Origin: Utricularia gibba
Lineage: Eukaryota; Plantae; Magnoliophyta
Length of the DNA: 64,000 nucleotides
Direction: 5' to 3'
NCBI GenBank assembly: GCA_002189035.1
Contig: NEEC01000028.1
Coordinates: 1 to 64,000 of the forward strand
In this document: positions 58,139 to 58,374 of the stretch, one piece after another
How the letters are laid out: every line of letters starts with the position of its first letter
Numbering within the stretch: the stretch's first letter is position 1
The notes under the pieces: model-generated
Told to the model about the DNA's origin: nothing
Databases searched by the model: none
The model's input: only the letters and a program-made list of their open reading frames with translations
Translations under genes and position numbers: made by a program

Positions 58139-58374
58139 CTATCGTCGTAGAAGCAGTTCCTCGGAAAGATTATGGTTCTCGGGTATCCAATCAATTAATC
58201 CCACAAACCGGCGAAGCTTCCCCAGTTTTCATAGCATCACCTTTAGAGCAACGCATTTTGGATGGCCTATTTGATCTCATTCGTATTCATAGCATCACCT
58301 TTAGAGCAACGCATTTTGGATGGACCTGTATCGGTTGTAGTCTTCTGAATCTATGTTGTCAAGAGGGCATATGA
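58139..58374 (+). CDS. cox2: cox2 exon 2 with a non-canonical C-terminal extension; first in-frame genomic stop at 58372-58374
   Basis: (P)[26 protein letters not shown], then 51 extra codons instead of the usual TAA. Confidence 0.85.

What the first reader, a model, noticed from the sequence alone, without database searches (positions are those of the whole stretch)
58201..58374. Chimeric cox2: stop codon lost, 51-codon extension ending at the edge of antisense rbcL
Seen: after the canonical end ...QTGEA there is no TAA. The frame continues [51 protein letters not shown] to TGA at 58372. The extension is a patchwork: a segment paralogous to 47204-47254, a 38-bp direct duplication (58228-58265 and 58286-58323) read in a second frame, about 40 nt of filler, then the rbcL MTPT edge. 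The junction AAACCGGCGAAG/CTTCCCCAGTTT is an imperfect palindrome centred on AAGCTT, which suggests an inverted microhomology switch. Inference: the cell must make a longer, Cys-rich COX2, create a stop by editing CAA (58204, 58249 or 58360), trim the mRNA or protein, or use another cox2 copy.
Basis: partly seen in the sequence, partly recalled or inferred. Interest (0 to 1): 0.75.

Follow-up and report, generated by a model that had tools for sequence, protein, structure and literature searches.

The report
Plant cox2 with remodelled C-terminal tail
A plant mitochondrial cox2 gene does run 51 codons past its usual end, but running on is an old habit shared with many other flowering plants, and only the last 35 codons are new scrap ending in a piece of chloroplast DNA.

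Summary
The window holds a mitochondrial cox2 gene whose closest relatives are in the Lamiales: exon 1 at 56361-57066, a group II intron at 57067-58138, and exon 2 from 58139. There is no stop after ...QTGEA, and the frame runs 51 codons to TGA at 58372-58374. That stop lies a few bases inside an antisense rbcL plastid insert.

The missing stop and the first 16 extension codons (58219-58266) are not a new accident. The same junction and a homologous linker (core I-[A/P]-S-P-x-E) follow COX2 in Melampyrum, Orobanche, Psychotria, Petunia, Camellia, Begonia and legumes, with very different distal tails.

Several lamiids carry a conserved extension domain of about 110 residues after the linker. 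In this genome that domain is broken up. Decayed pieces lie at 47254-47036 (minus strand) and 48312-48374. A 58-nt partial duplication shifts the cox2 frame, and filler plus rbcL sequence supply the last codons and the stop.

The two linker copies in the window differ at 7 codons, and all 7 differences are synonymous. This points to selection on the linker peptide.

Most likely the tail is a disposable appendage that is either cleaved off or tolerated. That step is inferred, not shown. This is an ordinary new member of a known kind.

The parts
56361..57066 (+). cox2 exon 1, holding the two transmembrane helices and most of the CuA domain, including the motif [12 protein letters not shown]
   Evidence: ORF. 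An identical product carries PF02790 and PF00116. It is 94-97% identical to Lamiales COX2.
57067..58138 (+). group II intron at the position of cox2i691
   Evidence: GTGCG at 57067. Rfam Intron_gpII domain V/VI at 58061-58138. Homologous to the introns of Orobanche and Castilleja.
58139..58218 (+). cox2 exon 2 up to the canonical end ...QTGEA
   Evidence: Translation. It is 95-97% identical in DNA to L002 and L003.
58219..58266 (+). conserved proximal linker of the COX2 extension (16 codons, [16 protein letters not shown])
   Evidence: Aligned with 15 other eudicot COX2 tails. DNA homology to Orobanche. All 7 codon differences from the 47-kb copy are synonymous.
58267..58371 (+). lineage-specific tail of 35 codons with 4 Cys and no predicted membrane helix
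   Evidence: maximum Kyte-Doolittle mean over 19 residues is 1.01. No protein of 42-135 aa in the 5.8-billion collection shares it.
58225..58265 (+). direct repeat, copy 1 (read in the ancestral frame)
58283..58323 (+). direct repeat, copy 2. It is read one base out of frame. In its native frame it continues ...I-L-D-G-P-V and stops at TGA 58346-58348.
   Evidence: The CCTGT after copy 2 matches the ancestral ...G-(L/I)-P-V codons of Orobanche.
58372..58374 (+). TGA stop of the extended cox2 frame, supplied by antisense rbcL sequence
58368..59239 (-). 5' part of plastid rbcL (codons 1 to about 293). It is frame-shifted and forms the left end of a plastid insert that continues with atpB (from 60289, plus strand) and trnM (62122-62194).
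   Evidence: ORFs. RbcL residues 240-293 matched at E = 2e-31. tRNA.
47036..47254 (-). detached, decayed copy of the ancestral COX2 extension (linker plus about 57 residues of the domain). It has in-frame stops, the first being TAG at 47107-47105, and starts exactly at GCTTCCCC.
   Evidence: tblastn E = 4e-10 to 1e-4 with five relatives' tails. No cox2 exon 2 homology upstream.
48312..48374 (+). short remnant of the distal part of the ancestral extension domain (...E-V-D-Q-T-E-A-A-S-L-A-A-K...), in the opposite orientation to the 47-kb piece
   Evidence: tblastn hits from four relatives cover this stretch and a fifth, weaker and longer one spans it; best E = 0.002. Translation.

Best explanation
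This is the working mitochondrial cox2 gene of a plant whose closest relatives are in the Lamiales. As in many other eudicots, its frame does not stop after ...QTGEA but continues into a C-terminal extension.

Shown:
- The first 16 extension codons are an old, conserved linker.
- Relatives carry a conserved domain of about 110 residues after the linker.
- In this genome that domain has been dismantled. Pieces lie at 47 kb and 48.3 kb and carry stop codons.
- A 58-nt partial duplication shifts the cox2-linked frame.
- About 40 nt of filler and the edge of a plastid rbcL insert provide the last codons and the TGA.

Inferred:
- COX2 is translated with this 51-residue tail, which follows the CuA domain into the intermembrane space.
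- The tail is then removed by proteolysis at or near the conserved linker, or simply tolerated.
- On this view the sequence distal to the linker is disposable, which would explain why it differs so freely between species and why it could be scrambled here without harm.
For: - Gene integrity: exon 1 and exon 2 are open, the CuA ligand motif is present, and the intron keeps GTGCG and domain V/VI.
- Shared junction and linker: Orobanche hederae DNA is homologous through window position 58241, and its frame runs more than 150 codons beyond the end. Melampyrum, Psychotria, Petunia, Camellia, Begonia, Vicia and Pterodon tails align on I-[A/P]-S-P-x-E and then diverge.
- Conserved distal domain in lamiids and in many free-standing ORFs: 5 hits, and 136 cluster representatives, of which roughly 50 match the domain part.
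- Remnants of that domain in the window.
- Selection on the linker: 7 of 7 differing codons between the two window copies are synonymous. The chance of this under random substitution is 2e-5 to 2e-4.
- Precedents: extended COX2 in tomato versus potato, with processing or editing offered as explanations (PMC6801519). Its authors also state that the variable ATP6 N-terminal extension is cleaved.
Against: - There is no RNA or protein data for this species, so cleavage, retention, editing and mRNA trimming cannot be told apart here.
- Some Lamiales have an ordinary stop right after the canonical end: Castilleja foliolosa has GCT TAA, and the Jasminum protein ends there. The extension is therefore not universal, and its history (repeated loss, paralogs or transfer) is unresolved.
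- 14% divergence between the two linker copies is far above the roughly 1-3% seen in cox2 exon 1 between families. One copy may therefore be foreign or very old.
- The rest of the genome could not be searched for a second cox2.
Confidence: 0.7

Rival explanations
1. A recent, one-off chimera. A template switch at the AAGCTT palindrome removed the stop in this lineage and fused cox2 to unrelated DNA, giving an aberrant and possibly harmful COX2.
For: The palindrome has 10 of 12 pairs at the junction, and only 5 such sites occur in the window. The distal 35 codons are indeed a patchwork.
Against: The same junction and linker occur in Orobanche DNA and in many eudicot COX2 proteins. By my own count on the Orobanche sequence (L002, folded) the palindrome drops to 7 of 12 there. 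The hairpin is weak, with z = -0.63.
Confidence: 0.04
2. C-to-U RNA editing turns an in-frame CAA (58249, or 58204 or 58360) into UAA, so the protein ends near the normal place.
For: Editing-made stops are known in plant mitochondria: atp6 and atp9 in potato and rpl5 in Salvia officinalis. In-frame CAA codons exist here.
Against: The residue at the 58249 column varies among relatives (K, R, Q, P, N), so no conserved editing target is evident. CAA 58204 encodes the Q kept in the aligned COX2 sequences with the ...QTGEA end. Residues after 58249 (I-L-D-G) are still conserved and differ only synonymously between the two window copies, which argues that translation passed beyond that point.
Confidence: 0.1
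3. The mature cox2 mRNA is trimmed upstream of the TGA, giving a non-stop mRNA, so most of the tail is never translated.
For: Stop-less mature mRNAs are reported in plant mitochondria (ccmC in potato).
Against: No stable stem-loop, t-element or tRNA-like structure is seen. The 58180-58420 fold has z = +1.29, the 58216-58330 fold has z = +2.6, and the junction hairpin has z = -0.63. No tRNA lies nearby.
Confidence: 0.1
4. This copy is not the one that matters. Another cox2 (mitochondrial or nuclear) supplies COX2, or the 58-nt duplication is an assembly error.
For: Duplicate cox2 genes occur in several plants. Only 64 kb could be searched.
Against: Both exons are open, the indels in exon 1 are multiples of 3, and the CuA ligands and intron core are intact. 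An independent Logan assembly matches 56322-57515 exactly. Without the duplication the frame would still lack the canonical stop and would end after 27 extra codons.
Confidence: 0.06

Closest known systems
Extended COX2 reading frames in other eudicot mitochondrial genomes (tomato versus potato, PMC6801519; Melampyrum, Orobanche, Psychotria, Petunia, Camellia and Begonia entries)
   Same: There is no stop at the canonical end. A homologous proximal linker is followed by a species-specific tail.
   Different: Here the distal conserved domain is gone from the gene. The tail is short (51 residues), partly made by a frame-shifting duplication, and closed by a plastid insert.
Processed terminal extensions of plant mitochondrial proteins (variable ATP6 N-terminal extension, PMC6801519; RPS2 C-terminal extension, Perrotta et al. 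2002, seen only as a reference title)
   Same: A conserved core sits next to a variable, dispensable appendage. This is the model proposed here for how the cell copes.
   Different: Cleavage of a COX2 C-terminal extension is not shown here, and I found no paper on it in the library searched.
Stop codons created by RNA editing (atp6 and atp9 in potato, PMC6801519; rpl5 in Salvia officinalis, PMC10048906)
   Same: The genomic ORF is longer than the conserved protein.
   Different: No conserved editable codon lies at the conserved end, and the linker beyond it is under selection.
CMS-type chimeric ORFs and COX2 C-terminal changes linked to male sterility (Aeginetia orf43, PMC8201098; G-type wild beet COX2 lacking 8 C-terminal residues, PMC12563029)
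   Same: Rearranged DNA alters or borrows cox2 sequence. The beet case shows that the COX2 C-terminus matters for complex IV.
   Different: Here the essential gene itself carries the tail. The novel part has no membrane helix, the canonical C-terminus is intact, and there is no phenotype information.
Plastid-derived inserts in mitochondrial DNA (MTPTs)
   Same: A frame-shifted rbcL-atpB-trnM block abuts the gene.
   Different: The insert edge happens to provide the stop codon of an essential mitochondrial gene.

Membership tests
Functional mitochondrial cox2 | COX2 transmembrane and CuA domains with the ligand motif H...C-x-E-x-C-x3-H-x2-M | tested here: met
   PF02790 and PF00116 on the identical product. 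The motif is read in the translation. 94-97% identity to Lamiales COX2.
Functional mitochondrial cox2 | Splice-competent group II intron and open exons on both sides | tested here: met
   GTGCG 5' end, domain V/VI hit at 47.2 bits, open frames.
Functional mitochondrial cox2 | Transcribed, edited, spliced and translated | not testable with these tools
   No RNA or protein data. The Logan contig L001 is unedited and unspliced, so it is DNA-like.
Eudicot COX2 with C-terminal extension | No stop at the canonical end, followed by the linker motif I-[A/P]-S-P-x-E within about 12 residues | tested here: met
   (15 other tails from asterids and rosids align).
Lamiid COX2 extension domain (about 110 residues, ...S-S-P-F-Y...H-I-P-G-E...E-L-D-x-T-E-A-A...) | Distal conserved domain in frame with cox2 | tested here: not met
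   The cox2 tail diverges after the linker. Only decayed remnants remain, at 47036-47254 (minus strand) and 48312-48374 (plus strand).
CMS-type chimeric ORF | Mosaic of sequences of different origin | tested here: met
   Duplication, filler and rbcL edge.
CMS-type chimeric ORF | Novel hydrophobic membrane segment | tested here: not met
   Maximum Kyte-Doolittle mean over 19 residues is 1.01.
CMS-type chimeric ORF | An extra ORF beside an intact copy of the donor gene, associated with male sterility | not testable with these tools
   Only this window could be read. No phenotype data.
Editing-created stop codon | Conserved editable codon (CAA, CAG or CGA) at the conserved protein end | tested here: not met
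   CAA 58249 is not conserved among relatives. No in-frame CGA or CAG.
Editing-created stop codon | C-to-U change seen in cDNA | not testable with these tools
   No transcript data.

The most novel reading that the evidence does not exclude
The 16-residue linker, conserved from legumes and Begonia to Lamiales, could be a dedicated C-terminal maturation signal of plant COX2, either a cleavage site or an export/assembly signal. Whatever lies downstream of it would then be disposable. That would explain why the cox2 3' end is such a frequent site of chimeric tails and borrowed modules. This genome would be a natural deletion experiment: the distal domain is destroyed, yet the linker is kept under purifying selection (7 of 7 synonymous differences).
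Probability: 0.3. Interest if true: 0.6.

Novelty: new member of a known kind. Interest (0 to 1): 0.3.

Why it matters
On its own this is a routine plant mitochondrial rearrangement with no sign of harm to the gene.

It matters in three modest ways.
- Annotation: "cox2 with a lost stop" should not be read as a defect or a male-sterility candidate in eudicots.
- A testable question: the tail has a conserved linker followed by free variation, and COX2 C-terminal maturation in plants has not been described in the literature I could search.
- Functional weight: the wild beet case, where loss of 8 C-terminal residues halves complex IV activity (PMC12563029), shows that this end of the protein is not neutral.

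Tried and rejected
- Pfam on the tail, on the 47-kb copy and on relatives' extensions: only the COX2 core domains matched. PF26057, listed for some hits, belongs to a different tail type (Cuscuta australis, Markhamia) and did not match in the local library.
- ESM Atlas search with the Melampyrum extension: nothing above noise.
- Cluster look-up of ten domain-bearing ORFs: no informative names.
- Synteny idea, that the 47-kb remnant marks the original cox2 downstream flank leading to rps13 and nad1: rejected. The Castilleja and Orobanche downstream flanks share nothing with that region, and the Castilleja 'NADHdh' gene matches a plastid insert.
- Hidden cox2 exon 2 upstream of the 47-kb copy: local alignment was no better than shuffles (954 of 2000).
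- Donors in the window for the 17-nt spacer, the filler and the two odd exon 1 patches: none found.
- 3' stem-loop or terminator: none.
- Independent contigs across the cox2/rbcL junction: two exact-protein look-ups and two metagenome pattern scans were blank. The 77-residue query found only the canonical exon 2 part.
- Species identification: not achieved. Run SRR2033663 is not mentioned in the paper library.
- Literature on cleavage of a plant COX2 C-terminal extension: not found in six searches.
The exons were handled separately by reference.

Full report
**What is there**

The window is angiosperm mitochondrial DNA rich in plastid inserts.
- Plastid-type rRNA genes, trnV, rps7, ndhB and ycf2 pieces lie at 5-17.6 kb.
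- A nad1 exon and rps13 lie at 43-46 kb.
- cox2 lies at 56.4-58.4 kb.
- An rbcL/atpB/trnM plastid block starts at about 58.37 kb.

cox2 has the following parts.
- Exon 1 is 56361-57066.
- A group II intron starts with GTGCG at 57067 and has its domain V/VI at 58061-58138.
- Exon 2 starts at 58139.

The best protein matches are Lamiales COX2 at 94-97% identity: Orobanche, Melampyrum, Castilleja, Sesamum, Jasminum and Mentha. A Logan contig from run SRR2033663 matches 56322-57515 exactly. Each exon was used by reference.

**Check of the observation**

- After ...IPQTGEA (GCT at 58216-58218) the frame continues for 51 codons to TGA at 58372-58374.
- A 41-nt repeat (38 nt exact) sits at 58225-58265 and 58283-58323. 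The offset is 58 nt, so the second copy is read one base out of frame.
- A related stretch lies at 47204-47254, inverted.
- The antisense rbcL match reaches RbcL residue 293 at about 58368, so the stop codon is made of plastid-derived bases.
- The junction palindrome is real, with 10 of 12 pairs. It folds weakly (-3.7 kcal/mol, z = -0.63).

**The missing stop is ancestral**

- Orobanche hederae cox2 (L002) stays homologous to the window past the canonical end, to 58241. Its frame then runs on for more than 150 codons.
- Melampyrum roseum, Psychotria serpens, Petunia hybrida, a Crocus entry and several unnamed contigs have the same start of extension.
- I took a census of the C-termini of the 120 best COX2 hits and aligned 15 extension-bearing tails. 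A linker of about 15 residues, with the core I-[A/P]-S-P-x-E, follows the canonical end in Lamiales, Gentianales, Solanales, Ericales (Camellia), Cucurbitales (Begonia) and Fabaceae (Vicia villosa, Pterodon). After the linker the sequences go separate ways.
- The window's [16 protein letters not shown] (58219-58266) is a good member of this set.
- Other Lamiales stop normally. Castilleja foliolosa has GCT TAA and the Jasminum protein ends there. Both states therefore coexist within the order, and even within Orobanchaceae.

**The distal domain and its fate here**

- In Melampyrum, Psychotria serpens, Cuscuta japonica and others, the linker is followed by a conserved domain of about 95 residues.
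- HMMER with a free-standing ORF that carries this domain (P0122) found 136 cluster representatives. Roughly 50 of them match the domain part, and most are short unnamed ORFs. It has no Pfam family in the local library and no useful Atlas neighbour.
- In the window the domain is not attached to cox2.
- The minus-strand stretch 47254-47036 encodes the linker and then about 57 residues of the domain, with in-frame stops. It begins exactly at GCTTCCCC and has no cox2 exon 2 homology upstream.
- A second, shorter remnant of the distal part lies at 48312-48374 on the plus strand.
- The ancestral extension has therefore been broken up and is decaying.

**How the present tail was built (inferred from the anatomy)**

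- In its native frame, repeat copy 2 reads [16 protein letters not shown] and soon hits TGA at 58346-58348.
- The P-V codons still match the ancestral G-(L/I)-P-V of Orobanche.
- An earlier state was probably a 27-codon extension, already truncated after the linker.
- Insertion of copy 1 plus a 17-nt spacer (58 nt in all) then shifted the frame. The ORF now runs through copy 2 and the filler into the rbcL edge.
- The origin of the spacer and the filler is unknown.

**Selection on the linker**

The cox2-linked linker and the 47-kb copy differ at 7 of 17 codons, and all 7 differences are synonymous. The probability of that under random substitution is 2e-5 to 2e-4. The peptide was therefore under purifying selection while the two copies diverged.

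Their 14% DNA divergence is much higher than the divergence of cox2 exon 1 between families. The copies are therefore old paralogs, or one of them is foreign. I could not decide which.

**How the cell most likely copes**

- Translation through the linker is supported by the selection signal.
- The variable, freely scrambled distal part next to a conserved linker fits a disposable appendage that is cleaved or tolerated in the intermembrane space. This follows the pattern of the ATP6 N-terminal extension, and the authors of the potato mitogenome suggested processing or editing for tomato's 194-residue COX2 extension (PMC6801519).
- This step is inference only. I found no paper reporting the mature C-terminus of an extended plant COX2.
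- An editing-made stop is less likely. The only plausible CAA (58249) is not conserved, and conserved residues follow it.
- mRNA trimming has no structural support.
- The tail has no predicted membrane helix, so it does not look like a classical male-sterility peptide.

**Verdict**

The reading "stop codon lost, chimeric cox2" is half right, because only the last 35 codons are new. This is a species-specific version of a widespread and poorly documented feature of eudicot cox2. Interest is modest. The conserved linker is the part worth an experiment.

Earlier scan notes on this genome report other genes with repeat-remodelled ends and a cox2-headed orf182. I did not test them.

Noticed in passing
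window 56373-56390 and 56692-56706: cox2 exon 1 has two small patches of clustered substitutions, each with a 3-nt insertion, in otherwise near-identical sequence compared with Orobanche and Castilleja. They give S-K-P-S-I for E-C-L-F-L near the N-terminus and A-L-W-N-S for V-V-V-D after the second membrane helix. No donor sequence was found in the window, and none of the 269 fetched proteins has the second patch.
   Followed up: partly
window 48312-48374 (+): A 20-codon remnant of the distal COX2 extension domain lies 1.1 kb from the 47-kb remnant and in the opposite orientation. This suggests an inversion or break inside the old extension.
   Followed up: partly
P0114 (Crocus sativus COX2) versus P0002 (Melampyrum roseum): The extension of a monocot (Crocus) COX2 entry is 92% identical to that of the hemiparasite Melampyrum, which is much closer than other asterids are. 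This could be transfer, contamination or mislabelling.
   Followed up: no
P0121, P0122 and the hits: The lamiid COX2 extension domain also occurs in many short unnamed ORFs, where it is fused to hydrophobic heads unrelated to COX2. The hydrophobic head of P0122 alone matches dozens of further clusters. It looks like a shuffled module family of plant mitochondria.
   Followed up: partly
L003 7200-7215 versus L002 6190-6700: Within Orobanchaceae, Castilleja foliolosa cox2 ends with a normal TAA, while Orobanche hederae runs on for more than 150 codons from the same junction.
   Followed up: partly
and one search hit list: At least 34 of the 120 best database 'COX2' proteins lack a spliced exon 2. 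Several that I read are read-throughs into the intron (…[13 protein letters not shown]…). Annotated COX2 lengths in databases are therefore unreliable.
   Followed up: partly
window 5200-17600: A large plastid inverted-repeat insert holds a full-length 16S rRNA, part of 23S, trnV-GAC, an open rps7 (13183-13650), ndhB exon pieces and a 512-codon ycf2 fragment.
   Followed up: no
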